IMG/VR virus record: IMGVR_UViG_3300037882_001770
Span: 1 to 64,000 of that record
Length of the DNA stretch: 64,000 bases
Strand: one strand, 5' to 3'
Made by a program: the position numbers and the translations under genes. The first letter of the stretch is position 1, and each line of letters starts with the position of its first letter. Below are positions 10,114 through 34,442 of the stretch, in pieces. Under the pieces are notes generated by a model, which was given only the letters and a program-made list of their open reading frames with translations, had not been told where the DNA came from and did no database searches.

Positions 10114-10449
10114 ATGGCCATTGCAAATACACATCGATCAGAAGATGCCACTCGTTTATTTAAAGCACCCGAGTATAAACTCATCAATGATAAAGTAGTA
10201 AAATTTAACGATGTCAAGGTGCACGAATTTAATATGGGAGATGTAGAGGACCCTGACTTGTATGCGGCAGAGCCATTATGGCAGTGGCAACAAACAGAAG
10301 CCGGAAAATGGGTCATGTCTCATGCAGTAGAAACTCCCTTCTGGCATCGCATAGTGAATCCATACACTTTTGGTTATACTTACTACGTGATTGCTCGGCT
10401 TTGCGAGCAGGATCAAACATACTGGACACTTAAATGGCAAAAATCTTAG
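10114..10449 (+). CDS. LRW-family-like protein heading the sugar operon
   Basis: Ends ARLCEQDQTYWTLKW; KWVMSHA helix. Confidence 0.7.
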   Translation: MAIANTHRSEDATRLFKAPEYKLINDKVVKFNDVKVHEFNMGDVEDPDLYAAEPLWQWQQTEAGKWVMSHAVETPFWHRIVNPYTFGYTYYVIARLCEQDQTYWTLKWQKS

Positions 10450-11405
10450 TAACAGGTGGTCTTGGGTTCATCGGGCACAATGTTGTAGCCCTGTTAGAAT
10501 CTCAAGGTCATCACTGTGTCATTACCGATACTCAAACTACCTACGGTATTATCCCACAAGACGAAATAGATTATCTCGTAAGTGAACGAAAAACAAAAAT
10601 AAAAACTGACAGAATCTATCGAATCGACATTGCTGATCGAGATGGTATTGATTGGGTCGTACGCGAACACAAGCCCGATGTTGTCATACACATGGCCAGC
10701 TTTCCTAGACAGAAAGTAGTCAATGCTAATCCTTCCTATGGCGCCCAGGTCATGATGGAGGGGTTGATTAATGTGTTAGAAAGCGCAAAACGTCACAAGG
10801 TAGAACGTGTAGTTTATATTTCAAGTTCAATGGTATATGGTGACTTTGAAGATCAAGTAACTGAGGATAGTGAATGCAATCCTATTGGACAATATGGCAT
10901 TATGAAATTCGCAGGGGAGCAACTTGTTAAAGATTACCATCGCCGCGGCGCTTTTGATTATGTCATTATTCGCCCCAGTGCTGTATATGGGCCACTTGAT
11001 GTCGAAGATAGAGTCGTTGCAAAATTTATGCTGGCAGCCATGCGCGGAGAAACTCTCAAGGTAAACGGCGCAGAAGAAACCCTAGACTTTACCTATGTTG
11101 ACGATGCTGCTGCCGGTATTGTATCCGCCACTACACGTGTCATGAGTGCCAATCGCATATATAATATTACAAAATCATGTTCAGTTGCGCTGTTAACCGC
11201 GGCCGAAATGATTGTTGCCCTTGTGGGCAAAGGAACCGTAGAAGTTCGCGACAGAGACGCAGATTTTCCCAGTCGCGGCGCATTAGATATTGATCGTGCT
11301 AGAGTAATTCTTGGCTACGATCCTAAGATTGATATTGAAGAGGGTTTCCAAAGGTACTATGATTGGCTTAAAAATTCCGTTTACTGGTCTCAAAAAACAG
11401 TATAA
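10434..11405 (+). CDS. NAD-dependent NDP-sugar epimerase/dehydratase (extended SDR)
   Basis: TGGLGFIG, SSSMVYG, YGIMK (YxxxK), RPSAVYGP, DFTYVDD. Confidence 0.93.
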   Translation: MAKILVTGGLGFIGHNVVALLESQGHHCVITDTQTTYGIIPQDEIDYLVSERKTKIKTDRIYRIDIADRDGIDWVVREHKPDVVIHMASFPRQKVVNANPSYGAQVMMEGLINVLESAKRHKVERVVYISSSMVYGDFEDQVTEDSECNPIGQYGIMKFAGEQLVKDYHRRGAFDYVIIRPSAVYGPLDVEDRVVAKFMLAAMRGETLKVNGAEETLDFTYVDDAAAGIVSATTRVMSANRIYNITKSCSVALLTAAEMIVALVGKGTVEVRDRDADFPSRGALDIDRARVILGYDPKIDIEEGFQRYYDWLKNSVYWSQKTV

Positions 11406-12441
11406 CAATCTTCGCACAGAGATATTAGATGCCACGGACGAAGTACTACGTTCAGGACAACTCATGGCAGGTAATCACACTGCTGAGTTTGAAAACTGGC
11501 TGGCCAAGAAAAATAAAAGCAAATATGCTATAACTTGTCATAGCGGCAGCCAGGCGCTTGAAATTATTGCAGAATACTATCGAGGCTTATCTAGTACCAA
11601 TCCACCCACGGTTGCCATACCCAGCATGACCTATGTTGCCACGGCAAACTCATTTTTAAGAGCCGGATGGAACTTGTACATTGCGGATACTGATCAGTAT
11701 GGTATACTGAACAAAAAGAAAATACCACACGATCTAAGTATTCAAGCAACTTGCCTAGTAGGATTGTATGGTATGGCCATCGATCAGCTAGACAATAAAT
11801 TTTGGGCCACAGATTTAATTATTGAAGATGGTGCCCAGCACTGGTTATCCAGCAACTGCAATCGTATTGGCAACGCTACTGCTATCAGCTTTGATCCAAT
11901 GAAAAACTTAAATGCGTATGGCAATGGCGGTGCTGTAGTTACAGATGATGTAGATCTTTTAGAATATGCTCGCGGGTGGAGTAATAACGGCAAGCCCAAA
12001 CATACCAATGTTGGAACCAATAGTCGAATGAGCGAAGTAGAGTGTGCTCAAATGTTGGTCAAAATCAAATATATCGATCTATGGCAGGATCGGCGTAGTA
12101 ACATTGCTCGCTACTGGATCGGTCGATTAAAAGACACCGGTGTCAGATGTTTGATTGACAAAAATAATGTCAACACACATTCATTTCATAAGTTTGTTAT
12201 TGATGTCGATCAACGAGATATATTAAAACGCAATCTCGAACTAAAGCATATTGAAACTAAGGTACATTACAATTTGCCATTGCACGAACTTCCAGTATAC
12301 GAAACATTTTCTGGACCAGATATTTTGAGCTGTGCTAGTAGTCTAAGTCGACGTGTGTTGAGTTTACCAATGTATCCGGAACTAACTGATCTTGAAGTTG
12401 AATATATTATTGATCAGGTGTTAGATTGCGCTTTATCATAG
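11359..12441 (+). CDS. DegT/DnrJ/EryC1/StrS PLP-dependent sugar aminotransferase
   Basis: SGSQAL, EDGAQ, SFDPMKNL (PLP lysine), GTNSRMSE, LSLPMYP. Confidence 0.93.
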   Translation: MIGLKIPFTGLKKQYNNLRTEILDATDEVLRSGQLMAGNHTAEFENWLAKKNKSKYAITCHSGSQALEIIAEYYRGLSSTNPPTVAIPSMTYVATANSFLRAGWNLYIADTDQYGILNKKKIPHDLSIQATCLVGLYGMAIDQLDNKFWATDLIIEDGAQHWLSSNCNRIGNATAISFDPMKNLNAYGNGGAVVTDDVDLLEYARGWSNNGKPKHTNVGTNSRMSEVECAQMLVKIKYIDLWQDRRSNIARYWIGRLKDTGVRCLIDKNNVNTHSFHKFVIDVDQRDILKRNLELKHIETKVHYNLPLHELPVYETFSGPDILSCASSLSRRVLSLPMYPELTDLEVEYIIDQVLDCALS

Positions 12442-14611
12442 CATAAGTGGCCAGCCACTCCCAGTCATAGGATTTTTTAAGTTCTTCAAAGTTTCCGCCA
12501 ACCGATTCATAGTAGTGTACCGCATCCTCTGCGCCCTTGATTGACCATTGCTCGGGTGTGTTATCCTTGTTGAGCCATTGTTTTAATCTGTATTCGTTTT
12601 CAATATTTGGCAAACTGTGTTTCAATTTGATACACTCGCGGAACGCAGTACGCCAACACATCCATGCTGTTGTATGATAGTTGGCCATACCAGATAGTAT
12701 AGGAACTACTTCGTGTGCTTGATCTAGCGTAAAGTCTAATCCTTCGGCAGTATTGGACATGACCAATTCCTTATTATAAGCGATCATGGCTTGATGCCCA
12801 TATACTAACTCGTTTACAGGATTGTATGCGTGGAATATGTAGTGTTTAGATTCTTGTAAGCGATCCGGTTGCCAGTCCCAGTCAAAGTTGGGATTAACTT
12901 CTAACTTGGCAAACACCGCAAAGAACCAAGGTGTAGTACTTAACTCTGCAGCTGCTCGATACGCAGCTACACGCCCGTTAACTCCACTACTGCGATGTAT
13001 ATTGTTTGCAATACTCACATGTGGTAATTGTAGATAATTATACTCGGCATTGGATTCTCCGTTGTCAATAAACACAAGATCCAGTGGCTCGTCTGGCAAC
13101 AAATGACGCTGAGTGCGATCAATGTTAGGATAATCGTACAACTGTTTTTTAATATAAGGAACACTTACTTTAGGAACAATACAAACACTTGCGCCAGAAC
13201 TAAGAGGTACAATAGTTTTAACTTTCTCGCGCCATAACGGAACAGGCGGAACTTCTATGTTCTCAGGCAACTCCTGTGTTGTAAATATTGCCAGTGGCCC
13301 TTTCCAATCAATGGTTTGTACCGCTTCAACGTGAGTATCAAATGCATGTGTAACTGTTGGTAGTTTGCGACGCGGTACACTGGTGCCTACATAATTTATA
13401 TCGTACCAATCTAGTAATTCGCATTTTTCACTGCGGTACAAGAATGTTGGAACATGCATAAAAAATGTATCGCCGAATTTCATTCCGTCACTGGCAAATA
13501 CGTGCAGCATGGTTGCTTGCCATTGTTCTGGATGCCATGTAAAATCAAAATTAGTATAGTCACATACACTACTACATATCCAGACAAATTCGTGTTCTTC
13601 CGGTATGTTTTTTGCCAAGCGGCGCAAGGTATCCAAATAGTTGTCAAAGTATCGAACTGTCTTATTTGCATTAGGAACTTGGCCTGCGTTGCCGTCCATG
13701 TGATCCAATTCGTATATTGCTGTGGCAACTCTTTCTGTGCGTATCTTGATTTGATCCACATACTTTATATCCGTTGCTCCGGGCATGCGATATTGCGGGC
13801 CACCTGTCTTTTGATGCTGAGTAGCAAATTGATAAATGTACGGCGGACTTCCTGGATCCGGACACCAAGAGAAGTCTATGTCTGCAGAATCGACACTGTC
13901 GGGCACGGTCCATAAGGTTTTATCAGCCAGCAGATCAGCTCGAGGGTATCGCATAAACTTACGCTCGGTTGCACCGTCAGCATGATATTCCACAGTGGGC
14001 ATGGTTTCTGCACGATGCCACTGATTGCCAAATACGTAAATGTAAGGAGGGTCTCCTGGATCTGGTCTCCACGAGTAGTTCCACTCACAATCAACTAGTA
14101 TATGCCAGTGATTATCGTGACGTTCTAGCAGTGTTGCTTGAGGCTTGTCTACAAATTTACGTTCAGTTGCGCCCGGTACATGATATTCTATTGTGGGCAT
14201 TTTGTTTGCAGGCCACCACTGATTACCAAACACATAAATGAATGGCGGATCCAGCGGATGTGGATGCCATGTATAGTCAAACTCTATTCCTTCAACCAAC
14301 TGTTTGTAGTTTTCTTGTCGTTCACGATTGGGCAACACTTTGGTATGAAATTTATACTCAAGTTTGCTGGCATGTTTAGGAACCAAGTAAGTGCCTGAGT
14401 ATGCGTGATGCTGACTTGGCCAGGTGTGAGTATATTGACTTTCCCACGGAACCGGCTCCCAAAGAAAATCCCATCCAGTGTAGTCCGATAAGTAACTTAC
14501 CCACCAGAAATATCTTGTTTTACTTAACTGTTGTGCATGTTCAATAGAAGTTGCTTCTTGCTCGTGTGCAAAAAGATTAGGTTTAACTCCGAAATAAAAA
14601 ACGTCAAACAT
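12407..14611 (-). CDS. 734-aa repeat protein with degenerate glycosyltransferase-like modules
   Basis: Three WxPxPxxPPxIYxF...GATxxK repeats; C-terminal domain aligns by eye with 31311-32237. Confidence 0.7.
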   Translation of the reverse strand: MFDVFYFGVKPNLFAHEQEATSIEHAQQLSKTRYFWWVSYLSDYTGWDFLWEPVPWESQYTHTWPSQHHAYSGTYLVPKHASKLEYKFHTKVLPNRERQENYKQLVEGIEFDYTWHPHPLDPPFIYVFGNQWWPANKMPTIEYHVPGATERKFVDKPQATLLERHDNHWHILVDCEWNYSWRPDPGDPPYIYVFGNQWHRAETMPTVEYHADGATERKFMRYPRADLLADKTLWTVPDSVDSADIDFSWCPDPGSPPYIYQFATQHQKTGGPQYRMPGATDIKYVDQIKIRTERVATAIYELDHMDGNAGQVPNANKTVRYFDNYLDTLRRLAKNIPEEHEFVWICSSVCDYTNFDFTWHPEQWQATMLHVFASDGMKFGDTFFMHVPTFLYRSEKCELLDWYDINYVGTSVPRRKLPTVTHAFDTHVEAVQTIDWKGPLAIFTTQELPENIEVPPVPLWREKVKTIVPLSSGASVCIVPKVSVPYIKKQLYDYPNIDRTQRHLLPDEPLDLVFIDNGESNAEYNYLQLPHVSIANNIHRSSGVNGRVAAYRAAAELSTTPWFFAVFAKLEVNPNFDWDWQPDRLQESKHYIFHAYNPVNELVYGHQAMIAYNKELVMSNTAEGLDFTLDQAHEVVPILSGMANYHTTAWMCWRTAFRECIKLKHSLPNIENEYRLKQWLNKDNTPEQWSIKGAEDAVHYYESVGGNFEELKKSYDWEWLATYAMIKRNLTPDQ

Positions 14612-15701
14612 GATTAGAATAGATGAAATTTACAACCATACATTTTGGCCTTGGATAAACCGGCACAAAGCCGGTACGAGAATGCTGTACTGCGATCCAC
14701 CTGGTAGGTCAGATCCTGAAAGTTTATGCGTGTTTGGCAAATCAACTTCCATAGAAACCGACTATGTGTTTTTTCACGATCAAGAACCGATACATATGGA
14801 TTTGCATGAACCTTTATTTAATGATGTTATGATTCGTACTGGAGATTTATCAGACCACACTAGAGGACACATAATTGTTAGCGAACAAGGACAATTTGCC
14901 GACCAACTGACTGAGAAGTACGGGTGGAAACAACACTACTATTTTTATCATGGCTGGGCCTGCCAGGATTGGTTTCGTGGTTACGATAAAGCATTTTTAA
15001 TTCCCAGAGCCGAAGATCGCAAGCCCAATAAAACGTTTATGAGTCCGAATCGTATTATTGCTGGCAAAAGAGATCATCGTGTGTTATTTCTTTATAATGT
15101 ATTCAAAAATAAATTGGAACAAAATCATATCAGTGCTCCAAGAATCTGCACCTACGAAAATGTAGATATATCTAGTATAGCACAAAAATACATCAATGTA
15201 TACCAGGATATAACCGATGTGTTTACGCAGGCCGAACTGCCAAGACTATTTGTAGGCGAAGACCAACAAGAAATGGCATCGTGCTGGCTGACCAACTTTG
15301 CCGAAGCGCAGGATAGTTTAGTGTATGTCCCAACCGAAACTGTTTATTTTGGAAACAGATTACACATCACTGAAAAAACATTCAAGGCTATTGCATTAGA
15401 AATGCCGTTTGTGTTAGTAGCACCAGCTGGCAGCTTAGAGTACATGCGCAGGTATGGATTTCAAACCTTTGGATCAATATTTGATGAGAGCTACGACGAA
15501 GAAACTAACGACATTCGTCGAATTGAAAAAGTTACCAAACTGCTTAAAGATTTAGATAATCTTACTGTGAAAGAGCGGCGAGAGATCCACCATGCATGTC
15601 TAGACACGGTCAAACACAACTATCATCATTTTTACAATGGCGGACTCACTGAAATACTGTGGAATGAATTAATCAACATGATGTACGAGCTTAGAGTTTA
15701 A
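14610..15701 (+). CDS. putative glycosyltransferase ('TEK' family, GT10-like motif)
   Basis: ET...ITEKTFKAI...PFV...GFQTF...DESYD. Confidence 0.6.
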   Translation: MIRIDEIYNHTFWPWINRHKAGTRMLYCDPPGRSDPESLCVFGKSTSIETDYVFFHDQEPIHMDLHEPLFNDVMIRTGDLSDHTRGHIIVSEQGQFADQLTEKYGWKQHYYFYHGWACQDWFRGYDKAFLIPRAEDRKPNKTFMSPNRIIAGKRDHRVLFLYNVFKNKLEQNHISAPRICTYENVDISSIAQKYINVYQDITDVFTQAELPRLFVGEDQQEMASCWLTNFAEAQDSLVYVPTETVYFGNRLHITEKTFKAIALEMPFVLVAPAGSLEYMRRYGFQTFGSIFDESYDEETNDIRRIEKVTKLLKDLDNLTVKERREIHHACLDTVKHNYHHFYNGGLTEILWNELINMMYELRV

Positions 15702-15720
15702 TTTTGTAGCTGATCGTATT

Positions 15721-16869
15721 GTGCGTAACAAAGCCTATCCAGCACTGGCACAGTGGCAGGCCGATCCGTATACCCCCAAATGGAGACAATTTGTTAACCA
15801 TTGGCCCAATACTGTTCCGTGTGAGTTACACGAACACTGTGCTACACACAATTTTCCGTACCAGTTACAAACTACAAAAGATACATATACTCGGCATGAC
15901 TTTTATACAATAGGGTTGGGATTTTTTAATTTTGATGTGGATTATTTTGGTCTATTAGATTTAGATATTCTTCGTGAGTTACAACAGTTAAATCTACGAG
16001 TGTTGTTCTATTATCACGAAGGTGACAATCCTTATCAAATTAAACAACGGTTGGATACCCTGTGCGTTGCTCATCGATTGAGTACAGATTGTTATCGTTT
16101 CGTTAGCGGAAATACCGCTGCTGACCGTATAAAAAACTTTGCTTGGTTTCCAGATCATGAACTGCTGTATTGGCATCGTAATCGATCAATTCCAGCAGAG
16201 CCAGTTAACGTAACTCCTCGGCAATATGATTTTACCTTGCTAAGCCGTACACACAAATGGTGGCGTGCCACTGTGGTCACAGATTTACATCGCACAGGAT
16301 TGTTGGACTGTAGTCAATGGAGCTACAATATCATTGATATAGGTGATTGTGAAGAAGATAATCCTATAGAAGTTGACAGCTTTGATAATTTACGTAACGA
16401 CATGCACTCATTTTTAACGCATGCTCCATATAGTTGTGATAGTTTGTCTTCGGATCAGCACAATGATCACCATCTGACAGAAAGTTCACACTACACAAAT
16501 AGCTACTTTAATATAGTGTTAGAAACACACTTTGATGCTGATGGGTCTGGTGGCGCATTCTTGACCGAAAAGACTTTTAAACCAATCAAGCATGCTCAAC
16601 CATTTGTTGTAATAGGTGCTCCGGGCAGTTTGTCTGCGCTGAGAGATTTAGGTTACCGCACATTTGATCATGTTATAGACACCGGCTACGATACTATACA
16701 AAACAATACCCAACGCTGGCAAGCTGTTAAATCTACCATTGAGCAAATTAAACAAAATCCTGCAGAATATTTTGCTCAATGCCTTGATGACGTACAACAT
16801 AACCAGCAATTATTTTTATCCAGCAAATACAACCGATTAAATAGATTACTTGAAAGATTACAAACATGA
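15721..16869 (+). CDS. putative glycosyltransferase ('TEK' family)
   Basis: FNIVLET...LTEKTFKPI...PFV...GYRTF...DTGYD; true start may lie upstream. Confidence 0.6.
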   Translation: MRNKAYPALAQWQADPYTPKWRQFVNHWPNTVPCELHEHCATHNFPYQLQTTKDTYTRHDFYTIGLGFFNFDVDYFGLLDLDILRELQQLNLRVLFYYHEGDNPYQIKQRLDTLCVAHRLSTDCYRFVSGNTAADRIKNFAWFPDHELLYWHRNRSIPAEPVNVTPRQYDFTLLSRTHKWWRATVVTDLHRTGLLDCSQWSYNIIDIGDCEEDNPIEVDSFDNLRNDMHSFLTHAPYSCDSLSSDQHNDHHLTESSHYTNSYFNIVLETHFDADGSGGAFLTEKTFKPIKHAQPFVVIGAPGSLSALRDLGYRTFDHVIDTGYDTIQNNTQRWQAVKSTIEQIKQNPAEYFAQCLDDVQHNQQLFLSSKYNRLNRLLERLQT

Positions 16870-19067: not shown

Positions 19068-19764
19068 TGTTTCCTGATAGATAATCGTGTATTTTTTTTG
19101 CTACGTATTTGTGCCCGTCAACTGACATGTGGCCTCCGGGACAGACTGGAATGTGCTCGGTCCATGTTAACATGTGTTCGTGTGGGAACCCAGGATAATT
19201 TTTGACTTGAATTAAATTTTCAAATTTATTTAAACGGGCAAATACCCCGGGGTAAAACCAAGTTTCGCAACTGTTGATAAACAGATATTTTTGACCTATT
19301 GTTCTAAAATGATTTTGCAGAGCAATTACCTGTGCAAACTGTTTATCAAATTGATGGTTATCATCGTAATGATGCTTAATATAATCATTTAACCACGGCA
19401 TGCGTTTTAATAACACCAGGCTGTTGACCGTAAACGGTAAATCCTTGCCCTGGTAAAATAAGTCAAATCGAGGCATTGCGGTCCATGCACATATTACTAA
19501 ACTATATTGTTGATCTACAGTTTCTGTCATGGCCATGCGAAAGATTCGATCATTGCTGCCGCCTATCAGACTGAGATTAACAACCGGCGTGTTTTGAAGT
19601 TTTCCAAGCAGCTCTGGCCAAGCCAATTGGCTAGGAGCAAGCGGCAGTATTTGTGCGACTCGATTATCAAAATATTCATTTCCTAACTCAGTGGTCACCG
19701 TAGCAGGTACGTCGGGCAATTCTAACCCAAATGAATTGCTGTCACCTATTACTAATATAGTCAT
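19060..19764 (-). CDS. SGNH/GDSL-like protein
   Basis: GDSNSFG, GGSNDRI, terminal GGH...GH. Confidence 0.7.
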   Translation of the reverse strand: MTILVIGDSNSFGLELPDVPATVTTELGNEYFDNRVAQILPLAPSQLAWPELLGKLQNTPVVNLSLIGGSNDRIFRMAMTETVDQQYSLVICAWTAMPRFDLFYQGKDLPFTVNSLVLLKRMPWLNDYIKHHYDDNHQFDKQFAQVIALQNHFRTIGQKYLFINSCETWFYPGVFARLNKFENLIQVKNYPGFPHEHMLTWTEHIPVCPGGHMSVDGHKYVAKKIHDYLSGNNV

Positions 19765-28196: not shown

Positions 28197-29343
28197 TGAT
28201 AGTAAGGTGTTGGTTTATAAATTGAAAAAAACGGTTTGGAAATTCTTGCCGAACTTGCAATCTCATGTCAGCAAGATGTTGTTGATTGTATTTACACGTT
28301 TCTTCCGCAGCGGCTAGGAAAGCTGAAAGATCTTGTTTGCACAATTCCTCAACTACGGCGGCTATACGATCAATTCGTTGTTGCCCATCTTCTATGTTAT
28401 CGAAACTTTCGTCGATTAGATGCCCAAACGTTTTAAATCCTAAATTGTGCAGGTCTCGGTAGTAACCCTGATTAGCTACCACTATAAATGGATGACCAAT
28501 TGCAATGGGTTTCCAAATTTTTTCTGTTCTAAAGCTGTATGGGTAGTCAAACACTGTTTCGGTAACTAGGCTAAAATATGTGTCAATATAAGGAGCTGGC
28601 TCTAGATAGATTTCTCCCCACGAGTTATCAAATAGATTGTACTTTATATAGTCAACTGAAAATTTTGTGTTGACTCGATCTTTATAAAATTTATATTCGT
28701 ACTTGGGATCCAAACACTTGATCACCCCGGGTGCAGACAGCAAATTGGTTGATTGTCTCCATAATTTTATAAAACGACTTTTTACAGGTGTGACGTCGAG
28801 ATTGGTCCAGATACTTTGATCCAGTATATTTGCTAGTTTGAATTTTTCAATAAGATATTTTCTGTGTGGCCGTGAACGCCCGTTTAAAAATAAAAACTTA
28901 TAAGGTTTGTCGGACCTGGCATAGATCTCATCAACTCTGGCGGCTGCTTCTACATTTTCTTCATAATCATACAGTTTAGGCAAAAAACTATCGTATTGTA
29001 AACATTTGTAGGAATCATCCATGTCGCCGCCGCCAATGATTAAAACTTTTCCAGCATGTGCTAGATCTTCAATGGGTATCGCCTGCATTAGCTGACCAGC
29101 AATAGTTTCAGAGCCTTCGGCTGGATTGCTAAAAATGTAGTATGCAAGACCTTGCTCAATTTCTCTTCTAATTCGTTCATGATACTTTATAAATTCTTTA
29201 CGGCTGATTACATACACTGCGCCCGGAATGGTTTCATGATTGCTAAAGTCCCAGAAGTCTCCGTCGGCGTAAGGTTGTAGTAAGTCGTAGACTTCACAAA
29301 ATGTATCTAGAATTAGTTTAAATTGTTTTTGCATGATACTCAC
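28189..29343 (-). CDS. putative glycosyltransferase ('TEK' family)
   Basis: FSLVTET...RTEKIWKPI...HPFI...GFKTF...DESFD. Confidence 0.6.
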   Translation of the reverse strand: MSIMQKQFKLILDTFCEVYDLLQPYADGDFWDFSNHETIPGAVYVISRKEFIKYHERIRREIEQGLAYYIFSNPAEGSETIAGQLMQAIPIEDLAHAGKVLIIGGGDMDDSYKCLQYDSFLPKLYDYEENVEAAARVDEIYARSDKPYKFLFLNGRSRPHRKYLIEKFKLANILDQSIWTNLDVTPVKSRFIKLWRQSTNLLSAPGVIKCLDPKYEYKFYKDRVNTKFSVDYIKYNLFDNSWGEIYLEPAPYIDTYFSLVTETVFDYPYSFRTEKIWKPIAIGHPFIVVANQGYYRDLHNLGFKTFGHLIDESFDNIEDGQQRIDRIAAVVEELCKQDLSAFLAAAEETCKYNQQHLADMRLQVRQEFPNRFFQFINQHLTINE

Positions 29344-30739
29344 ACTCTGCCCACCATGAACTCATTTCTGGAAAGGTTTCTAAAAAATTAGTTCCGCGTC
29401 GACGATCGTGTTCGCTAAAAAATTTGTAAAAGTCGGCCTTGTTACGATTAATATATGTAGGATCTAACTTTTGTCCATCGCGCATCCAGGCTATGTCTCG
29501 GTCCAATCTAGCTATCTCGTAGTCTTTGAATCCTTTAAAACGAGTTTCTTCTGTTTCAATTTGTCGAATCATCCAAGCCCATAATTGTTCAAGTTGGTCC
29601 ACATAACTTTCAGGCAACAGTTGCAGACTCTGCCATGTGGGCTGACGTAGAACTGGAGTATCAAACCATACACGCTGATAAGTGTTGCTGTATATTTTAC
29701 GTAGTCCTAGTATGCCAGCGAACAACGAACTAAGATTAGTGACACTAAGATTATTCATAGTAACAATAAAGGTAATGCTGTTTCGTCCTGGTATCTCCGT
29801 CAGGAACTGATTAACACGATCCCACAACAGGTCAAAATTTAGACCGTGTCTAATATATTCTGCTTGATCACCAAAACTGTCTAAACTGATAAACTGCATG
29901 AAGTGTTCAATTTTTTCACCTTCACATAGTTCCTTTACATACCCCTTATACTTCTGCCAGGACTTTTCATCCACGCTGAAGTTACTAGTCACATTCAAGT
30001 GTAGGTCTGGTTTGGGGTTGGCCAACACGTAATCAAAGACACGATAGGTATTTTTATCTAACATGGGTTCGCCACCAGTCATACGAAAGTGTTGTAGTTC
30101 TGGGTATAGTGTGGGCCACCATTCCCAAAATGCATCTACATACGGATTGTCTTCGCGGACAGGTATAGGACGATTCCGGCCAACAAAGTGGCCAGGATCA
30201 TTGTGAGTAGTTGATGTAGGATATCCTCCTAGGCGATCAACTTCTTGTTGCCAAGTACTACTAAACTGCGGACTACAATAACTGCAAGCAAGATTGCATA
30301 CGTGATTAAAATTAACTTCCACATAACTAGGAACAACATCTTCGTCTCCATTGGAGTTTACTATAATATCAAAGTCCTTGGCAGCCCAAGGCTCGCCACT
30401 ACGATAATGTCTGTCGCTTAACTTGTTGTTATCCTCCATGGCCCAGCAGTAGCTACATTCGCTAGGGCGTTCTTGCTTGAGCATAATCTTACGTTGTTCT
30501 TTCTTGTAAGGAGTATTATGCAATGCGGCAGGATTATTCTTTAATAGTTCTGCAGGTATAGGATGTAACGGTGGATGATAACAACTATTATTAAGTCCGG
30601 TTGGCAGATGTAAACTTACCTGTTTCCATTTGGCCAAGCAAAGTGCATGACCAAGTTGATCTTTCATTTCTTCGGCAGATGACAAGAACTTTGATTTAAA
30701 GTCTTGTGTCATATTGTCGCCTTTGTTTTGAGAATTCAT
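29318..30739 (-). CDS. radical SAM protein (AKW/CYHP subtype)
   Basis: LCLAKW..SCYHP..CSYCW; CNLACSYC; GGEP. Confidence 0.9.
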   Translation of the reverse strand: MNSQNKGDNMTQDFKSKFLSSAEEMKDQLGHALCLAKWKQVSLHLPTGLNNSCYHPPLHPIPAELLKNNPAALHNTPYKKEQRKIMLKQERPSECSYCWAMEDNNKLSDRHYRSGEPWAAKDFDIIVNSNGDEDVVPSYVEVNFNHVCNLACSYCSPQFSSTWQQEVDRLGGYPTSTTHNDPGHFVGRNRPIPVREDNPYVDAFWEWWPTLYPELQHFRMTGGEPMLDKNTYRVFDYVLANPKPDLHLNVTSNFSVDEKSWQKYKGYVKELCEGEKIEHFMQFISLDSFGDQAEYIRHGLNFDLLWDRVNQFLTEIPGRNSITFIVTMNNLSVTNLSSLFAGILGLRKIYSNTYQRVWFDTPVLRQPTWQSLQLLPESYVDQLEQLWAWMIRQIETEETRFKGFKDYEIARLDRDIAWMRDGQKLDPTYINRNKADFYKFFSEHDRRRGTNFLETFPEMSSWWAECEYHAKTI

Positions 30740-31317
30740 TGTTCTATTAGTTTTATTAAATTACGAAACAAATGAGCCGTGCCGTCGGCATTTAAGTGCC
30801 CATCTGGTAACCGATGTGAAGGAGTAACATGCGGAAGGAACACCGGTATTTTCACATTTCGCGGTTCCCAACTAAAAAATAAAACTTGTTTATTTTGAGA
30901 AATAATATTTGAATACGCGGTAGATACCAACATGTCACTTACGGAATTCCAATGATCGGTATCAAACAAACTGTATAAAGATTTATGTAAAAGTTGATAG
31001 CTGTCCTCGATGCATTGACTGTCTAATTCCAGCGGAAGTTCAATAAATTCTTTTGATGATAACAGGTCAATATTTTGTTTATGATATTTTAAATGCCATC
31101 TAGAACTAAAAGTCCACCCAACAACTACTGCATCGTGTTTTTCAAAATTTTCATAAACATCAAGTGCTATTGCAGAATTACTTTTTCCAGGTCTTGATAA
31201 ATTTGTAACCTCATATCCCAGCTCAACAAAATGCTGGTTAAGTGTTTCTTTAGGATCAAGATGCAATCCGTAAGTAAAGCTACATCCATCGATCAATAAT
31301 CTTTGTTGCATTACCAT
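30736..31317 (-). CDS. SGNH-like protein
   Basis: GCSFTYG, GKSNSAI, DGHLN. Confidence 0.65.
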   Translation of the reverse strand: MVMQQRLLIDGCSFTYGLHLDPKETLNQHFVELGYEVTNLSRPGKSNSAIALDVYENFEKHDAVVVGWTFSSRWHLKYHKQNIDLLSSKEFIELPLELDSQCIEDSYQLLHKSLYSLFDTDHWNSVSDMLVSTAYSNIISQNKQVLFFSWEPRNVKIPVFLPHVTPSHRLPDGHLNADGTAHLFRNLIKLIEQ

Positions 31318-32237
31318 CCTTCTTGTCTGCGTATTACATCTATTTCTCTAACCATAACCCCTTGATTATGCCAGTTGCTACGGTAGTGATTTTTAAAAAA
31401 CTTACTTGCAATTTGATCTAGCCATATAATAGGCAAGTCCAACTGCGATGCTAAATCGTCTGAAATACGGCCAGCAACTAATTCTGGATCATGCGACTCG
31501 ATAGTTTTCCATAGTTCAGCCAGTGCATCAAAATTTTGCACTTGTTTATAATCCCACTCAGTAAGCATGGTCATGTAAGTTCCCATTCTTGCTCCGACTA
31601 TGCTCCAAATGCCATGGTCAACATCTCGACCAACATTGTGCCATATGCTAAGATGATCAAAGTTTCTGTGATGGACTCTTTCTCTAAAATCTGCTACAGT
31701 GGGAATTGATCCTTTGTTCAAGCACATTTTAACACCTTCTCTGAAGCCAGCTCTCCAAGCATGAAAAGGACTGCCGTTTGGGTAAGTCACACTGTAACAA
31801 TCATGCATGGCCCAATACAACGGATCAAAACAAAATTCAACCACTGTTTCGTCACGACCGTCGGTAACTTCGTGGGTTCGCATATCATTGACAAACTTTC
31901 GTGTCCACGAACTAAGCCCACCATTGCCATACATGAGTCCATTGACGTGGTTTCTAGCTCGCCAACGAAATACTGCATTCTCCCATTGTGGATCTGGGAA
32001 GGTCAAAGTTAAATTAAAAAATTCTGGACTAGGTAAATTATCGCCATCGATCAGAATAAATCGCTCTGTATCACTGGCAGCCGCAGCGGCTTTGTGTGCC
32101 GCGTCACTGCCCTTGACTCCGTCTACACGCTTGGCCCACGGAATCATATTTTGTATTTTTATCCAAAATTCTTCCTTTTGTGGCTCGTCATACGTTAGAT
32201 AAACGCAGTCCAAGTCTGCTACATCAATTTGATTCAT
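31311..32237 (-). CDS. putative GT-A fold glycosyltransferase
   Basis: VYLTYDEP, GVKGSDAAH, ILIDGDN (DxD after hydrophobic strand). Confidence 0.65.
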   Translation of the reverse strand: MNQIDVADLDCVYLTYDEPQKEEFWIKIQNMIPWAKRVDGVKGSDAAHKAAAAASDTERFILIDGDNLPSPEFFNLTLTFPDPQWENAVFRWRARNHVNGLMYGNGGLSSWTRKFVNDMRTHEVTDGRDETVVEFCFDPLYWAMHDCYSVTYPNGSPFHAWRAGFREGVKMCLNKGSIPTVADFRERVHHRNFDHLSIWHNVGRDVDHGIWSIVGARMGTYMTMLTEWDYKQVQNFDALAELWKTIESHDPELVAGRISDDLASQLDLPIIWLDQIASKFFKNHYRSNWHNQGVMVREIDVIRRQEGW

Positions 32238-32577
32238 AAGTTTTTACACTCCATTTAATATGTGGTTGAGATTCGTTTACAACAACGCAAACGTCTCGAG
32301 GATCACACGCAACTCCGTCGGTTGACGGCGCAAGTTTTATATTGGCCTGGGTGGTAACTCTAACCAGTTGGCTGTTGATTACCTTAACTCGGCTCGGCGA
32401 TTCGGCATAGGTTGTTGCATCGATATCTATGTAATTACCTGGCATATCCTCCATACTGTAAAATAGCGGATTACCATCGTTGTCATAGTACAGTCTATAA
32501 AATATTTTTAATGGCTTTGTGTCTGGAACTTCGGCCCAGGCAGCCCAAAAATTATCTGTGGTGTTATCATTGATCAT
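32224..32577 (-). CDS. hypothetical protein
   Basis: ATG 32577 overlaps upstream stop. Confidence 0.7.
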   Translation of the reverse strand: MINDNTTDNFWAAWAEVPDTKPLKIFYRLYYDNDGNPLFYSMEDMPGNYIDIDATTYAESPSRVKVINSQLVRVTTQANIKLAPSTDGVACDPRDVCVVVNESQPHIKWSVKTYESN

Positions 32578-33350
32578 GATATAACCCAATCTTTTACGTG
32601 GTAATGTACAAAACCCCATTGTGCTACTGTATTAATTCTAAGCCCAGGATCAGTATGTTCCCATATTAGTTCCTGGGTCCAGTTTTTGCTTTGAATTGGA
32701 ATAACATGTTTTTTCATATGTACTATAGTAGGGCCCATACCAGACGGTAGTGTACAAAGCTCGGGTCCAAGAATTTGTGCAGCTAATGCATACACAACAT
32801 CAGTAGTTGCTACATCGTCTCGGAACTTTAACAAGGTTTTGTACTGCTCCCAATTTTCAAATATTTTTCGTACGGTGCGGAAAAATTCTTGCGCAAAGGG
32901 GCTGGCACGCCAGTAGGTAATAGCATTATACACGTCTGGCAAATGGTTTGAATCAAATAGTTTTCTGTAATGTCTCGAGGTCGATAGTTCATCGTAAAAA
33001 TTTCTGCAACCAGTACTAATTACTAAATCTCTGGTTTCAAATAACTTCCACCAGTGGTCAATTGGACTCGCCGCAAGCATGTCTGCTTCTAGTTTAATAG
33101 TTTGTCTGTAAGGACTAGCAGAAAACACTTGCCAGTCATTAGCATAGCCTCCTAGGTCACCATATGGTAACGGAACAACATGATCAAATACTGGATCATT
33201 ACACCGTTCGACTGTAATTACAGAGATGTTGGCATCTGGATGCCATTGACGAATGGACTTGGCCAATTGTACGGCACAGGCCAAGTAGTCCACTGATTCT
33301 GTATTGACAGCCGGTATAAGATAACCGCGTTCAGCAAGGATTGGCAACAA
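32574..33350 (-). CDS. putative GT-A (GT8-like) glycosyltransferase
   Basis: SPYRQTIKLEADML, terminal HYH; paralogue of next gene. Confidence 0.65.
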   Translation of the reverse strand: MLPILAERGYLIPAVNTESVDYLACAVQLAKSIRQWHPDANISVITVERCNDPVFDHVVPLPYGDLGGYANDWQVFSASPYRQTIKLEADMLAASPIDHWWKLFETRDLVISTGCRNFYDELSTSRHYRKLFDSNHLPDVYNAITYWRASPFAQEFFRTVRKIFENWEQYKTLLKFRDDVATTDVVYALAAQILGPELCTLPSGMGPTIVHMKKHVIPIQSKNWTQELIWEHTDPGLRINTVAQWGFVHYHVKDWVIS

Positions 33351-34137
33351 TGGCTCCTAATTGACTTTTTCCCATAGCATGGAAATCTTGATTTACTAAC
33401 TTGATCCAGCGGTGTTGTTTTTGTGCTGTAAAATAATCGACTCGATACTGGTCTTGGTCAATTTGTTTTAGGATCGGACCGGATGTGAGTGATGCCAGGC
33501 CCCACGGAATTGTATTATGGTTGATAACATGTCCGTTGACCATCCCCAAGGCAATACTTAACGCATGGTCGTTACGATATGTTGCTTTTGAATTTTTGTA
33601 CACATTTCTATAGTGTAACCAGTTATCATGAATCATGATCATACTGTTAAACAGCAACTCAGCAGTTTTTGAACGCCGAAAAAACATTACTGTGGCCCAC
33701 CACATGGGCATGTTGTGTCGCCCAAACACGTTCAGATCGGTGAATGGCTGTAATCCGGTGATGTCGTATGCTGTGCGGTGTGCTAAAAAATCTTCTTTGC
33801 TTTCTAATAGCACCAGCAGTTGATCACTGGCCACAATATAATCTGCATCGAGCACCATAGTGTTGTCCCACGGTGACAACGCATATGCATCAATTCTATT
33901 GGCATTATACCAGTTGACCACTCCTTCAATATCGCCAAAATGGCGATACGACGGTTCTCTGTGCTTAGTTTTTACCACGCAATCAAAGTTGTAATGCACT
34001 GGAATATTTTCACAATCTGTTACGACACATACAGGAAGATTTAGATGTCGACGAATGTTATTGGCCGACCAGGCTGCCATGGCCAGATAGTCAATCTGAT
34101 CATTATTAAATGCAAAAATTAAAACACCGGTGGTCAT
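33331..34137 (-). CDS. putative GT-A (GT8-like) glycosyltransferase
   Basis: SPWDNTMVLDADY (DxD), RNDHAL, HAMGK. Confidence 0.7.
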   Translation of the reverse strand: MTTGVLIFAFNNDQIDYLAMAAWSANNIRRHLNLPVCVVTDCENIPVHYNFDCVVKTKHREPSYRHFGDIEGVVNWYNANRIDAYALSPWDNTMVLDADYIVASDQLLVLLESKEDFLAHRTAYDITGLQPFTDLNVFGRHNMPMWWATVMFFRRSKTAELLFNSMIMIHDNWLHYRNVYKNSKATYRNDHALSIALGMVNGHVINHNTIPWGLASLTSGPILKQIDQDQYRVDYFTAQKQHRWIKLVNQDFHAMGKSQLGAIVANPC

Positions 34138-34442
34138 CTTGTTTTTGTTAACTCAGTGTACTCAACCAACCAACCGTTTAACTGTTCTTGCCATCGTCGT
34201 TGGCTTTGTTCTAACAGTTCTTTGGTGTTTATTTTGATTGGGTTTTCATACAGATCCAACAGTACCACAGTATCGTTACTTCCACTAGTAACTATTGCAG
34301 AGTGCAATTCTGGACCGGCAAGCCAAAGCCCGCCATTATATGCAAATGTCAGTTTGGCCTGGTATTTTTCTTTGAGCACCCGCTTGGCTGATGCGTGATC
34401 AAATCTGCCGCGAGAGTGTGTGAGTAATTCTTCAGTATTCAT
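34134..34442 (-). CDS. hypothetical protein (first gene of the minus-strand tailoring operon)
   Basis: Coupled ORF directly after a promoter. Confidence 0.75.
   Translation of the reverse strand: MNTEELLTHSRGRFDHASAKRVLKEKYQAKLTFAYNGGLWLAGPELHSAIVTSGSNDTVVLLDLYENPIKINTKELLEQSQRRWQEQLNGWLVEYTELTKTR

What the first reader, a model, noticed from the sequence alone, without database searches (positions are those of the whole stretch)
10434..34442. 24-kb phage tailoring cluster next to tail-fibre genes: candidate virion-glycan hypermodification system
Seen: about 24 consecutive genes comprising an SDR epimerase/dehydratase, DegT aminotransferase, amidinotransferase, carbamoyltransferase, 2OG-Fe(II) oxygenase, 2 SGNH-like proteins, 6 radical-SAM enzymes and about 7 GT-like proteins. 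The 16.5-kb minus-strand part is translationally coupled behind its own promoter and starts right after Ser/Thr-rich fibre genes. Established: these families build and decorate sugars by amination, amidination, O-carbamoylation, acylation and hydroxylation. Inference: the phage builds a heavily decorated glycan on virion fibres or baseplate, or alternatively on host surface or DNA. No nucleobase hydroxymethylase or modified-nucleotide kinase is in the window, which weakly favours a non-DNA target.
Basis: partly seen in the sequence, partly recalled or inferred. Interest (0 to 1): 0.88.

Follow-up and report, generated by a model that had tools for sequence, protein, structure and literature searches.

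The report
Jumbo-phage glycan-building cluster beside tail fibres
An uncultured jumbo phage carries about 23 soluble sugar-building and sugar-decorating genes, including six radical-SAM enzymes of an uncharacterised family, right after its tail-fibre genes; the block is conserved across very many environmental phages and probably puts an unusual glycan on the virion, but the target is unproven.

Summary
Positions 10434-34442 hold 23 tightly packed genes. Well supported are an NDP-sugar SDR, a DegT aminotransferase, a StrB1/AGAT-type amidinotransferase, a NodU-type carbamoyltransferase, an SGNH/GDSL-like protein, and six radical-SAM enzymes that all pass the NCBIfam cut-off for NF033640 (N-terminal twitch rSAM, function unknown). 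One protein (31311-32237) has a predicted GT-A glycosyltransferase fold, and a homologous domain sits in the 734-aa protein. The other five "GT-like" proteins, the 2OG oxygenase and the second SGNH protein rest on motifs or sub-threshold matches only. No cluster protein has a membrane segment.

The gene order, fibres followed by the module, recurs in dozens of IMG/VR contigs. A reduced core sits after a fibre gene in cultured Ralstonia phage RsoM2USA. In one bacterial chromosome the same rSAM family lies in a surface-polysaccharide locus.

Best reading: a cytoplasmic glycosylation and glycan-tailoring system, most likely acting on Ser/Thr-rich fibre or other virion proteins (about 0.45). DNA, host-surface and small-molecule targets remain open. 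It is a new variant of a known kind (virus-encoded glycosylation; cyanophage carbohydrate islands).

The parts
10434..11405 (+). Extended-SDR NDP-sugar epimerase/dehydratase
   Evidence: Pfam Epimerase 1.6e-46 and GDP_Man_Dehyd 2.7e-36. PDB best hits are a UDP-sugar 4-epimerase-type protein (6zl6), dTDP-glucose 4,6-dehydratases and UDP-glucose 4-epimerases.
11311..12441 (+). DegT/DnrJ/EryC1-type PLP sugar aminotransferase; the real start is probably downstream of the TTG
   Evidence: Pfam PF01041 1.4e-54, with the match starting at residue 34.
12407..14611 (-). 734-aa protein. The C-terminal domain (aa 509-698) is homologous to the GT-A protein 31311-32237 but has the DxD replaced. The N-terminal half carries a repeated FDF.W.P..W motif.
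   Evidence: hhalign A8 against A2: probability 99.6%, E 5e-24. Alignment. No Pfam, PHROG or PDB hit.
14610..15701 (+). GT-B-like family member (paralogue of 15721 and 28189)
   Evidence: Shared C-terminal domain. Family alignment A5 has invariant E-T...T-E-K...K. Fold evidence is weak.
15721..16869 (+). GT-B-like family member
16866..17885 (+). Pentein-type amidinotransferase (StrB1/AGAT-like)
   Evidence: Profile A4 against PDB: StrB1 1bwd 2.9e-27, AGAT 4.7e-26, HsvA and SxtG. Invariant Cys324 near the C-terminus, in the GG-x-x-C-x-T motif. 78-91% identical in 16 related contigs.
17895..19067 (-). Radical-SAM enzyme, N-terminal twitch type (sixth, accessory paralogue)
   Evidence: NF033640 at 191 bits (cut-off 170). 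Pfam SPASM at residues 11-82, then Radical_SAM at 122-260. Best relatives in other contigs are only about 31% identical.
19060..19764 (-). SGNH/GDSL-like hydrolase or acyltransferase (DUF6071)
   Evidence: Pfam DUF6071 1e-7. Profile A9 against GDSL protein 4rsh 4e-4, plus TesA. GDS block conserved.
19761..20324 (-). Possible 2OG-Fe(II) oxygenase (motif only)
   Evidence: HxD/E...H...R conserved in 4 sequences. No Pfam or PDB hit.
20324..21829 (-). NodU/CmcH-type O-carbamoyltransferase
   Evidence: Pfam Carbam_trans_C 2.4e-48 and Carbam_trans_N 8.2e-30. NodU model 7.5e-37, below its equivalog cut-off. Present downstream in 42 of 58 related contigs.
21924..23012 (-). Conserved 362-aa protein of unknown fold
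   Evidence: In 36 of 58 contigs. Many invariant residues. No Pfam, PHROG, NCBIfam or PDB hit.
22996..24300 (-). Radical-SAM enzyme, N-terminal twitch type
   Evidence: NF033640 at 286 bits. Orthologues 66-77% identical in other contigs.
24284..25501 (-). Radical-SAM enzyme, N-terminal twitch type
   Evidence: NF033640 at 344 bits.
25498..26868 (-). Radical-SAM enzyme, N-terminal twitch type
   Evidence: NF033640 at 413 bits. More than 7000 metagenomic clusters at E<=1e-10.
26865..28196 (-). Radical-SAM enzyme, N-terminal twitch type
   Evidence: NF033640 at 305 bits.
28189..29343 (-). GT-B-like protein (modelled member of the three-paralogue family)
   Evidence: AF2 model pLDDT 93.4. Foldseek PDB hits are nearly all GT-B enzymes, but the best E is 0.035.
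29318..30739 (-). Radical-SAM enzyme, N-terminal twitch type; the core paralogue
   Evidence: NF033640 at 311 bits. In 59 of 68 contigs. 34% identical orthologue in RsoM2USA at the ORF349 position.
30736..31317 (-). Possible SGNH-like protein (motif only); accessory
   Evidence: Invariant D-G-C-S, G-K-S-N and H in 5 sequences. No database hit.
31311..32237 (-). GT-A-fold glycosyltransferase of an unannotated, very abundant family
   Evidence: AF2 pLDDT 88. Foldseek: PBCV-1 capsid-glycosylating GT 2p6w 1.6e-4, probability 1.0, then GT2-type enzymes. BFVD hits include the Che8 GT. Invariant D64-G65-D66. At least 8000 clusters, none with a function name or Pfam domain among the 120 listed.
32224..32619 (-). 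Conserved 131-aa protein, unknown
   Evidence: In 28 of 68 contigs. No hit.
32574..33350 (-). GT8/glycogenin-like candidate glycosyltransferase (paralogue of the next gene)
   Evidence: Paralogy 1.9e-13. Profile hits only to glycogenin-1/2, E 0.07-0.7, aligned through the DxD. No Pfam hit.
33331..34137 (-). GT8/glycogenin-like candidate glycosyltransferase
   Evidence: As above. The second Asp of the D-A-D motif is invariant. 2650 representative clusters.
34134..34442 (-). Conserved 102-aa first gene of the module, unknown
   Evidence: Evenly conserved, no Cys, not precursor-like. Homologue in RsoM2USA at the ORF354 position.
34443..34539 (-). Intergenic gap with a 10-bp hairpin (34484-34511) and a TGTATAAT 6 nt before the ATG
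   Evidence: Promoter function not shown.
34540..35523 (-). Ser/Thr/Gly/Ala-rich putative fibre protein; candidate glycan acceptor
   Evidence: 29% Ser+Thr. Homologues have 24-33% Ser+Thr. No homologue in 50,697 phage records.
35537..36928 (-). Tail fibre/spike with a C-terminal autoproteolytic chaperone-like domain
   Evidence: PHROG tail-fibre and structural hits; weak Peptidase_G2 IMC match. Homologue of Atu_ph07 gp176.
36979..37584 (-). Conserved structural/baseplate-associated protein
   Evidence: phrog_11259 9e-73. 45-57% identical in 93 jumbo phage records, annotated as structural in some.
37747..52530 (-). Giant 4927-aa virion protein upstream in the same direction
   Evidence: Homologous to Atu_ph07 gp180 'virion structural protein' and, more weakly, to the DNA annotated as RsoM2USA_361. 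The RsoM2USA paper reports ORF361 (>288 kDa) in virions by MS (PMC8504454).

Best explanation
The region is a phage-encoded, entirely soluble glycosylation and glycan-tailoring module at the end of the late structural gene block (baseplate, giant virion protein, fibres).

Proposed mechanism (inferred):
1. The SDR and the DegT aminotransferase convert a host NDP-sugar into an amino sugar.
2. Up to seven glycosyltransferase-like proteins add sugars one at a time to a cytoplasmic acceptor. These are one GT-A with a second GT-A-derived domain, two glycogenin-like proteins and three GT-B-like proteins.
3. The acceptor is most likely Ser/Thr residues of the adjacent fibre proteins or another virion protein.
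4. The amidinotransferase, carbamoyltransferase, SGNH-type proteins and a possible 2OG oxygenase decorate the sugars, giving guanidino, O-carbamoyl, acyl or deacyl, and hydroxyl groups.
5. Five conserved N-terminal-twitch radical-SAM enzymes, plus one accessory copy, each do a distinct radical step on the sugars. Candidate steps, by analogy with BtrN, NeoN, AprD4 and BlsE, are oxidation, epimerisation, deoxygenation or decarboxylation.

Shown here: the gene content, the folds and families listed, the lack of membrane proteins, and the conserved linkage to fibre genes.
Inferred: the order of steps, the chemistry of the rSAM enzymes, and the acceptor.
For: Enzyme families.
GT-A fold with an invariant DxD.
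All six rSAMs keep CX3CX2C, the GGEP motif and three N-terminal cluster cysteines.
Each rSAM paralogue has its own orthologues at 66-87% identity in other contigs, while paralogues are 20-31% identical to each other. That implies distinct functions.
No membrane segment in any protein, and no flippase, polymerase, initiating transferase or transporter family.
Conserved order fibre, 102-aa protein, two GT8-like, GT-A, rSAM and so on. Of 68 contigs with at least 9 kb upstream of the query rSAM match, 57 carry the GT-A gene there and 54 the GT8-like genes.
The same core follows a fibre gene in cultured RsoM2USA. The RsoM2USA paper reports the neighbouring giant protein ORF361 (>288 kDa) and ORF356 (21.1 kDa) in virions by MS.
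In a Crocinitomicaceae chromosome, three N_Twi_rSAM genes lie among a UDP-glucose dehydrogenase, a carbamoyltransferase, a GT1 fusion, GDSL proteins, a sulfotransferase and a dioxygenase.
A carbamoyltransferase lies within 10 kb of the rSAM in at least 6 further bacterial loci.
The adjacent protein and its homologues are 24-33% Ser+Thr.
Against: No glycan was or can be observed here, so the acceptor is pure inference.
Conserved gene order in phage structural regions can be inherited without any functional link.
Five of the seven GT calls are below significance.
The N_Twi_rSAM family has no characterised member that I could find. Some bacterial members sit in unrelated neighbourhoods.
The left sub-cluster lies next to ThyX, a nucleotide-metabolism gene.
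Only 64 kb of a roughly 330-kb genome was seen.
Confidence: 0.45

Rival explanations
1. DNA hypermodification. The transferases and tailoring enzymes build a decorated glycan or side chain on a modified base of the phage genome to block host nucleases. Precedents are glucosyl- or arabinosyl-hmC and the hypermodified thymidines.
For: Soluble GTs with no membrane partners also fit a DNA acceptor.
Virus-encoded GTs that hypermodify DNA with diverse glycans are known (Pyle et al. 2024, cited in PMC12619734).
From my own knowledge, radical-SAM and PLP enzymes occur in thymidine hypermodification pathways.
The left sub-cluster is adjacent to ThyX.
Against: No hydroxymethylase, nucleotide kinase or DNA-binding family was found among the genes scanned in and beside the cluster.
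ThyX makes ordinary dTMP.
The module sits at the end of the structural gene block, co-directional with the fibre genes, in all relatives seen.
Seven transferases and six rSAMs would be far beyond any known DNA modification.
Confidence: 0.15
2. Host-surface remodelling. The module makes or alters a host envelope polysaccharide during infection, borrowing the host's lipid carrier and export machinery. This has been proposed for the carbohydrate gene islands of T4-like cyanophages. Possible benefits are blocking superinfection or masking receptors.
For: The bacterial counterpart locus is a surface-polysaccharide cluster with an ABC transporter.
Cyanophage S-SCSM2R combines GTs, KdsA/B, an amidinotransferase and 2OG oxygenases, and its authors discuss host-surface modification.
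Against: The phage module has no initiating phosphoglycosyl transferase, flippase, polymerase or transporter, and no membrane segment at all.
Its position in the late structural block would give little time for envelope remodelling. That timing is inferred, not measured.
Confidence: 0.15
3. A soluble specialised metabolite. The enzymes make an aminoglycoside-like or nucleotide-sugar-derived small molecule (amino, guanidino, carbamoyl sugar) that acts on the host or on competitors.
For: The enzyme set mirrors aminoglycoside pathways. It has a StrB1-like amidinotransferase, a DegT aminotransferase, twitch-type rSAMs (BtrN is one), a TobZ/NodU-type carbamoyltransferase and GT-B-like proteins.
The authors of S-SCSM2R labelled a similar trio 'antibiotic synthesis genes'.
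Against: No cyclitol synthase (2-deoxy-scyllo-inosose or inositol-phosphate synthase), resistance gene or exporter was found.
Seven transferase-like proteins suggest a longer glycan.
Stable linkage to fibre genes is not explained.
Confidence: 0.1
4. The radical-SAM enzymes act on protein rather than sugar. They would epimerise or cross-link residues of the fibre or giant virion protein, RiPP-style, while the transferases act separately.
For: SPASM/twitch rSAMs are best known as peptide maturases, and weak NCBIfam hits go to such maturases.
Agrobacterium phage Atu_ph07 has a different three-rSAM cluster at the syntenic place after its fibre gene.
Against: The adjacent fibre proteins have 0-1 Cys, so thioether chemistry is excluded there.
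The small conserved proteins are evenly conserved and not precursor-like.
In bacteria the family co-occurs with sugar enzymes and carbamoyltransferases.
Confidence: 0.1

Closest known systems
Virus-encoded virion glycosylation (chlorovirus PBCV-1 A64R and partners; mycobacteriophage Che8-type capsid and tail-tube glycosylation, Freeman et al. 2023)
   Same: Virus-encoded soluble GT-A transferases that act in the cytoplasm without the lipid-linked pathway. The best structural match of 31311-32237 is the PBCV-1 capsid-glycosylating enzyme, and the Che8 GT is among the viral hits. The genes lie next to structural genes.
   Different: Those systems have a few transferases and no radical-SAM, amidino- or carbamoyl-transferases. 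Here the glycan and acceptor have not been observed. The structural match is at the level of the general GT-A fold (TM 0.3-0.4, about 12% identity).
Carbohydrate/'LPS' gene islands of T4-like cyanophages (P-SSM2, from my own knowledge; S-SCSM2R, PMC12801897)
   Same: Large phage islands of GTs and sugar-nucleotide enzymes. In S-SCSM2R there is also an amidinotransferase, a DegT-family enzyme, an rSAM and 2OG oxygenases. The function is unresolved.
   Different: Different phage lineage and gene families. The amidinotransferase is only about 31% identical. Those islands show no six-fold N-twitch rSAM array and no fixed position after the fibre genes.
NCBIfam NF033640, twitch domain-containing radical SAM protein (N_Twi_rSAM)
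   Same: All six rSAMs score above the curated cut-off and share the domain order: twitch/SPASM first, then the rSAM core.
   Different: The family has no assigned reaction. Here there are five or six ancient paralogues in one operon, with over 7000 metagenomic relatives at E<=1e-10.
Aminoglycoside-type tailoring enzymes (StrB1, BtrN, NeoN, AprD4, TobZ)
   Same: The same enzyme superfamilies are present: pentein amidinotransferase, twitch rSAM, and NodU/TobZ-type carbamoyltransferase. They offer the best chemical analogies for the steps.
   Different: No cyclitol synthase is present. The twitch domain is N-terminal rather than C-terminal. The context is a phage structural operon.
Bacterial flagellin/pilin O-glycosylation with decorated nonulosonic acids
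   Same: Cytoplasmic O-glycosylation of Ser/Thr-rich surface filaments with amidino-decorated sugars. This is an analogy from my own knowledge.
   Different: No nonulosonic-acid synthase or Maf-type transferase was detected, and the amidino chemistry is different.

Membership tests
NF033640 N_Twi_rSAM | Whole-protein score above the curated cut-off (170 bits) | tested here: met
   191, 286, 344, 413, 305 and 311 bits for the six proteins.
NF033640 N_Twi_rSAM | CX3CX2C radical-SAM cluster motif and SAM-binding GGE motif | tested here: met
   Invariant C152, C156, C159 and G211-G212-E213-P214 in the six-paralogue alignment.
NF033640 N_Twi_rSAM | Auxiliary-cluster (twitch/SPASM) domain N-terminal to the rSAM core | tested here: met
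   For four proteins Pfam SPASM lies near residues 10-100, ahead of Radical_SAM at about 120-300. Invariant C38, C98 and C101.
Pentein amidinotransferase (StrB1/AGAT) | Significant full-length similarity to solved amidinotransferases | tested here: met
   1bwd 2.9e-27 and 2jdx 4.7e-26, covering both halves of the protein.
Pentein amidinotransferase (StrB1/AGAT) | Catalytic Cys near the C-terminus, plus conserved His/Asp | tested here: met
   Invariant C324, H185 and D187 in 19 sequences. C324 aligns with the StrB1 Cys in the GG-x-x-C-x-T motif.
NodU/CmcH carbamoyltransferase | Both Carbam_trans_N and Carbam_trans_C domains above Pfam cut-offs | tested here: met
   104.8 and 164.3 bits. The N-domain match covers only profile positions 128-345. 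The NodU equivalog cut-off is not reached.
GT-A glycosyltransferase (31311-32237) | Rossmann-like GT-A fold | tested here: met
   AF2 pLDDT 88. Foldseek probability 1.0 to 2p6w and other GT-A enzymes, E 1.6e-4. Viral GTs appear in BFVD.
GT-A glycosyltransferase (31311-32237) | DxD metal/nucleotide-sugar motif | tested here: met
   D64-G65-D66 invariant in 25 sequences.
GT-A glycosyltransferase (31311-32237) | Membership of a described GT sequence family | tested here: not met
   No Pfam hit better than E 0.07. No PDB sequence hit. The 120 best metagenomic homologues carry no Pfam domain.
GT8 (glycogenin-like) for 32574-33350 and 33331-34137 | Significant match to GT8 sequences or models | tested here: inconclusive
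   All 19 PDB profile hits are glycogenin-1/2, but E is 0.07-0.7 (earlier). No member hits Pfam Glyco_transf_8.
GT8 (glycogenin-like) for 32574-33350 and 33331-34137 | DxD motif at the end of the nucleotide-binding half | tested here: met
   The second Asp of D-A-D (D99) is invariant in 68 sequences and aligns with the glycogenin DxD.
GT-B glycosyltransferase for 14610, 15721 and 28189 | Two-Rossmann GT-B fold | tested here: inconclusive
   Confident model (pLDDT 93). Foldseek hits are nearly all GT-B, but the best E is 0.035 and TM 0.3-0.4. No Pfam or PDB sequence hit.
2OG-Fe(II) oxygenase (19761-20324) | HxD/E...H iron triad and 2OG-binding Arg | tested here: met
   H106, D/E108, H165 and R177 are conserved in 4 sequences.
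2OG-Fe(II) oxygenase (19761-20324) | Detectable similarity to the family | tested here: not met
   No Pfam hit. No relevant PDB profile hit.
SGNH hydrolase | Similarity to SGNH proteins with the block I GDS motif | tested here: met
   19060-19764: 4rsh 4e-4, TesA 0.19, G-D-S conserved. For 30736-31317 only motifs were found, so that one is inconclusive.
Lipid-linked surface polysaccharide pathway (Wzx/Wzy or ABC type) | Initiating phosphoglycosyl transferase, flippase/polymerase or transporter; membrane proteins | tested here: not met
   No such Pfam family. The highest 19-residue hydropathy is 1.69, in the SDR Rossmann fold, and no protein has a membrane-like segment.
Phage DNA glycosylation/hypermodification | Enzyme making the modifiable base (dCMP/dUMP hydroxymethylase) and/or a modified-nucleotide kinase | tested here: not met
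   None among the genes scanned in and beside the cluster; only ThyX. Not every ORF in the window was scanned, and the rest of the genome was not available.
Virion glycosylation system | Glycan covalently attached to virion proteins | not testable with these tools
   Needs mass spectrometry of virions.
Aminoglycoside-type biosynthetic cluster | Cyclitol-forming enzyme (2-deoxy-scyllo-inosose or inositol-phosphate synthase) | tested here: not met
   No DHQ-synthase-like or inositol-phosphate synthase family in any cluster protein.

The most novel reading that the evidence does not exclude
The module makes a new chemical class of glycan on phage tail fibres or other virion surface proteins. Its sugars would be reshaped by five or six N-terminal-twitch radical-SAM enzymes and capped with guanidino and carbamoyl groups. 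That would give the first reaction assignments for the uncharacterised NF033640 family. It would also be the first case of radical-SAM-dependent glycan tailoring on a virus particle, in one of the most widespread uncultured jumbo-phage groups.
Probability: 0.3. Interest if true: 0.85.

Novelty: new variant of a known kind. Interest (0 to 1): 0.68.

Why it matters
Virion glycosylation by bacteriophages has been shown for only a few phages, with small transferase sets. This would be a far larger, chemically richer system, and the metagenome counts suggest it is very common. The rSAM gives more than 7000 protein clusters at E<=1e-10. The GT-A protein gives at least 8000, and the 120 best listed carry no function name or Pfam domain.

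It offers a genetic context for an uncharacterised radical-SAM family that also occurs in bacterial polysaccharide loci. It brings several unannotated protein families into view. A reduced core exists in a cultured phage (RsoM2USA), so the question of what the target is can be tested directly. A decorated fibre glycan could affect adsorption, host range, resistance to proteases or grazers, and recognition by host defences.

Tried and rejected
- Near-identity DNA search of the 24 kb against 50,697 phage records found nothing.
- Pfam at E up to 10, PHROGs and NCBIfam gave nothing usable for 13 cluster proteins. Scanning every member of alignments A5 and A3 also gave nothing.
- PDB profile searches were empty or irrelevant for the GT-A family, the GT-B-like family, the 362-aa protein, the 734-aa protein and the 2OG candidate.
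It was repeated with an orthologue alignment.
- An artefact or a recoded stop codon as the cause of the N-terminal SPASM order was rejected. The window has a 4927-aa ORF in the standard code, and the order defines a curated family.
- The 102-aa protein as a RiPP precursor was rejected. It is evenly conserved and has no Cys.
- The promoter/terminator scan showed no enrichment over shuffles.
- An aminoglycoside cluster was rejected as the main reading because there is no cyclitol synthase.
- A second bacterial context (Reichenbachiella) showed no sugar genes, so the bacterial evidence is mixed.
- Literature searches found no paper on the N-twitch rSAM family or on this module.
- The Arch Virol 2025 'moraphage' paper notes core GTs in another aquatic jumbo lineage. 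I could not establish that it is the same clade.

Full report
**What phage this is.** The window comes from a jumbo myophage.
- The genes from 52530 to 63969 match baseplate wedge, hub and virion structural families.
- The 1143-aa wedge protein is about 34% identical to those of Sinorhizobium phage Phosso, Agrobacterium phage Atu_ph07 and the GAP32/CBB-type enterobacterial jumbo phages.
- The 24-kb region has no near-identical DNA among 50,697 deposited phage genomes.
- No tRNA is present.

**Layout.** The ORF list gives 23 genes in 10434-34442.
- The left part has mixed orientation. It holds the SDR and DegT genes on the plus strand, a 734-aa gene on the minus strand, and three plus-strand genes ending with the amidinotransferase at 17885.
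- From 17895 to 34442 there are 17 minus-strand genes. Neighbours overlap by 1-46 nt, and the only gap is 94 nt.
- Directly upstream, in the same direction, lie a Ser/Thr-rich 327-aa protein, a fibre with a C-terminal chaperone-like domain, a conserved structural protein and a 4927-aa protein.
- The giant protein is homologous to Atu_ph07 gp180. It matches more weakly the DNA annotated as RsoM2USA_361, which I take to be the ORF361 that the RsoM2USA paper found in virions by mass spectrometry.
- The 97-nt gap between the fibre gene and the first module gene holds a 10-bp hairpin, and a TGTATAAT sits 6 nt before the ATG. A similar TGTTATAAT sits 5 nt before the ATG at 10114. The generic promoter/terminator scan is not above chance, so "own promoter" stays unproven.

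**Families that are solid.**
- SDR NDP-sugar epimerase/dehydratase.
- DegT aminotransferase.
- Carbamoyltransferase.
- Amidinotransferase. An alignment of 19 orthologues hits StrB1, AGAT, HsvA and SxtG at 1e-22 to 3e-27, and the C-terminal Cys is invariant.
- SGNH-like DUF6071 protein.

**The six radical-SAM proteins.**
- For four of them, Pfam places the SPASM domain before the rSAM core.
- NCBIfam puts all six in NF033640, "twitch domain-containing radical SAM protein", above its cut-off.
- They keep the CX3CX2C and GGEP motifs and three N-terminal cysteines.
- They are only 20-31% identical to each other. Five of them have their own orthologues at 66-87% identity in other contigs, so they are old paralogues with separate roles.
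- I found no paper that assigns a reaction to this family.

**The "GT-like" proteins.**
- 31311-32237 has no Pfam, PHROG or PDB sequence match. With 25 homologues it gave a confident model (pLDDT 88).
- Its best structural match is the PBCV-1 enzyme that glycosylates the chlorovirus capsid (E 1.6e-4, probability 1.0). GT2-type enzymes follow.
- Among viral models it matches two uncharacterised multi-domain phage proteins, then phage glycosyltransferases including that of mycobacteriophage Che8. D-G-D is invariant.
- The C-terminal domain of the 734-aa protein is its homologue (99.6%), but the DxD is replaced.
- 32574-33350 and 33331-34137 are paralogues. With 31 and then 68 sequences, every PDB hit is glycogenin-1 or -2, aligned through the DxD, but E is only 0.07-1.5. 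No member hits a Pfam GT family.
- The three paralogues 14610, 15721 and 28189 gave an excellent model (pLDDT 93). Its matches are almost all GT-B enzymes and none is significant.
- So there is one well-supported transferase plus one derived domain, and five candidates.
- The 2OG oxygenase and the second SGNH protein rest on conserved motifs alone.
- 21924-23012, 32224-32619 and 34134-34442 remain unknown.

**No membrane machinery.** No protein has a hydrophobic stretch typical of a membrane helix. No initiating transferase, flippase, polymerase or transporter family appears. Whatever is built is built on a soluble acceptor.

**Distribution.**
- The rSAM query found 546 relatives in IMG/VR, of which the 80 best were fetched. 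It found more than 7000 protein clusters in metagenomes at E<=1e-10.
- The GT-A family has at least 8000 clusters. The 120 best listed carry no function name or Pfam domain.
- The GT8-like family has 2650 representative clusters.
- Mapping all window proteins on the loci shows one conserved order: structural protein, fibre, Ser/Thr-rich protein, 102-aa protein, two GT8-like, 131-aa protein, GT-A, rSAM, GT-B-like, four rSAMs, 362-aa protein, carbamoyltransferase. The oppositely oriented amidinotransferase and GT-B-like genes follow, then the 734-aa protein and DegT/SDR.
- In contigs with enough flank, the core genes are present in 52-59 of 68 upstream. Downstream, three are in 42-52 of 58 and the 362-aa protein in 36 of 58.
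- The amidinotransferase (17), SGNH (11), SDR (8), DegT (7) and 2OG candidate (3) are accessory. This looks like a constant core with variable decoration.
- Contigs binned in marine and freshwater MAGs carry the same block.

**Cultured relatives.**
- Only RsoM2USA has the GT-A family. There, an SDR, a fibre-like protein, the 102-aa protein, both GT8-like proteins, the GT-A protein, the core rSAM and a second GT-A-like protein lie in the same order after the giant virion protein. All are annotated hypothetical.
- Atu_ph07 has homologues of the structural protein and fibre, followed by a different cluster with three conventional rSAMs.
- The enterobacterial relative 7t3 has nothing comparable.

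**Bacterial context.**
- In a Crocinitomicaceae chromosome, three N_Twi_rSAM genes sit among a UDP-glucose dehydrogenase, an SDR, a carbamoyltransferase, a GT1-UbiA-GDSL fusion, a sulfotransferase, a GDSL protein, a PhyH dioxygenase and an ABC ATPase.
- A carbamoyltransferase, DegT or SDR homologue lies within 10 kb in about ten further bacterial loci.
- A singleton in Reichenbachiella has unrelated neighbours.
- The link to glycan loci is therefore real but not universal.

**Interpretation.**
- The evidence supports a sugar-building and sugar-decorating system with good confidence, about 0.8.
- For the acceptor, three things favour a virion protein: the soluble nature of all components, the position at the end of the structural block, and the deep conservation of the fibre-module junction. 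The neighbouring protein and its homologues are 24-33% Ser+Thr.
- None of this is proof, so I put the virion-protein reading at about 0.45. DNA hypermodification and host-surface remodelling are each about 0.15. A soluble metabolite and a protein-directed role for the rSAMs are each about 0.1.

**Relation to known systems.**
- The nearest kinds are virus-encoded virion glycosylation (PBCV-1, mycobacteriophages) and the unresolved carbohydrate islands of T4-like cyanophages.
- A 2025 paper on cyanophage S-SCSM2R notes a DegT-family enzyme, an rSAM and amidinotransferases. It calls them antibiotic synthesis genes of unclear purpose. One amidinotransferase and a 2OG oxygenase were found in its virion preparation.
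- This module differs in four ways: the six-fold N-twitch rSAM array, the unannotated GT families, the fixed position after the fibre genes, and its abundance.
- I rate it a new variant of a known kind, with interest 0.68.

Noticed in passing
window 37747-52530 (-): A single 4927-aa ORF. It is homologous to Atu_ph07 gp180 'virion structural protein' and, more weakly, to the DNA annotated as RsoM2USA_361. The RsoM2USA paper found ORF361 (>288 kDa) in virions by MS. Ser+Thr is about 18% throughout.
   Followed up: partly
L163 (Atu_ph07 NC_042013) 17445-24183: At the syntenic place after the giant protein and fibre gene, Atu_ph07 has a different cluster. Three conventional radical-SAM genes (gp171, gp168, gp165) are interleaved with hypothetical proteins of about 110-300 aa. 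This suggests that rSAM clusters after fibre genes are a wider trait of this jumbo-phage lineage.
   Followed up: partly
window 34447-34456 and 10095-10113: Extended -10-like TGTATAAT / TGTTATAAT elements lie only 5-6 nt before the ATGs of 34134-34442 and 10114-10449. This hints at leaderless or near-leaderless transcripts for both halves of the cluster.
   Followed up: no
window 12407-14611 (-), N-terminal half: A repeated motif of the form (D/C)Y..FDF.W.P..W occurs at least twice, ahead of the GT-A-derived domain. No known family matches it.
   Followed up: no
window 9413-10090 (+) and 6483-7772 (+): A ThyX flavin-dependent thymidylate synthase lies just upstream of the cluster. A DUF2201 metallopeptidase/VWA protein lies further left.
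   Followed up: no
L165 (Synechococcus phage S-SCSM2R PQ898602) 12566-17721: A cultured T4-like cyanophage has an amidinotransferase (about 31% identical) flanked by KdsA/B and 2OG oxygenases, near many GT genes. The published virion proteome contains that amidinotransferase and one oxygenase.
   Followed up: partly
L001 (Vibrio phage K566 OZ196521) 14980-21716: Three annotated rSAM genes match the N-twitch query at about 22-24% identity, and a weaker fourth match lies on the opposite strand. They are interleaved with hypothetical proteins, near a PagP-like gene and NAD-salvage genes, with no fibre genes nearby.
   Followed up: no
L137 (Reichenbachiella faecimaris) 9989-11194: A single bacterial N-twitch rSAM has no sugar genes around it. 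Its neighbours are a two-component system, DUF3108, YaaA and an AraC regulator. The family is therefore not restricted to glycan loci.
   Followed up: yes
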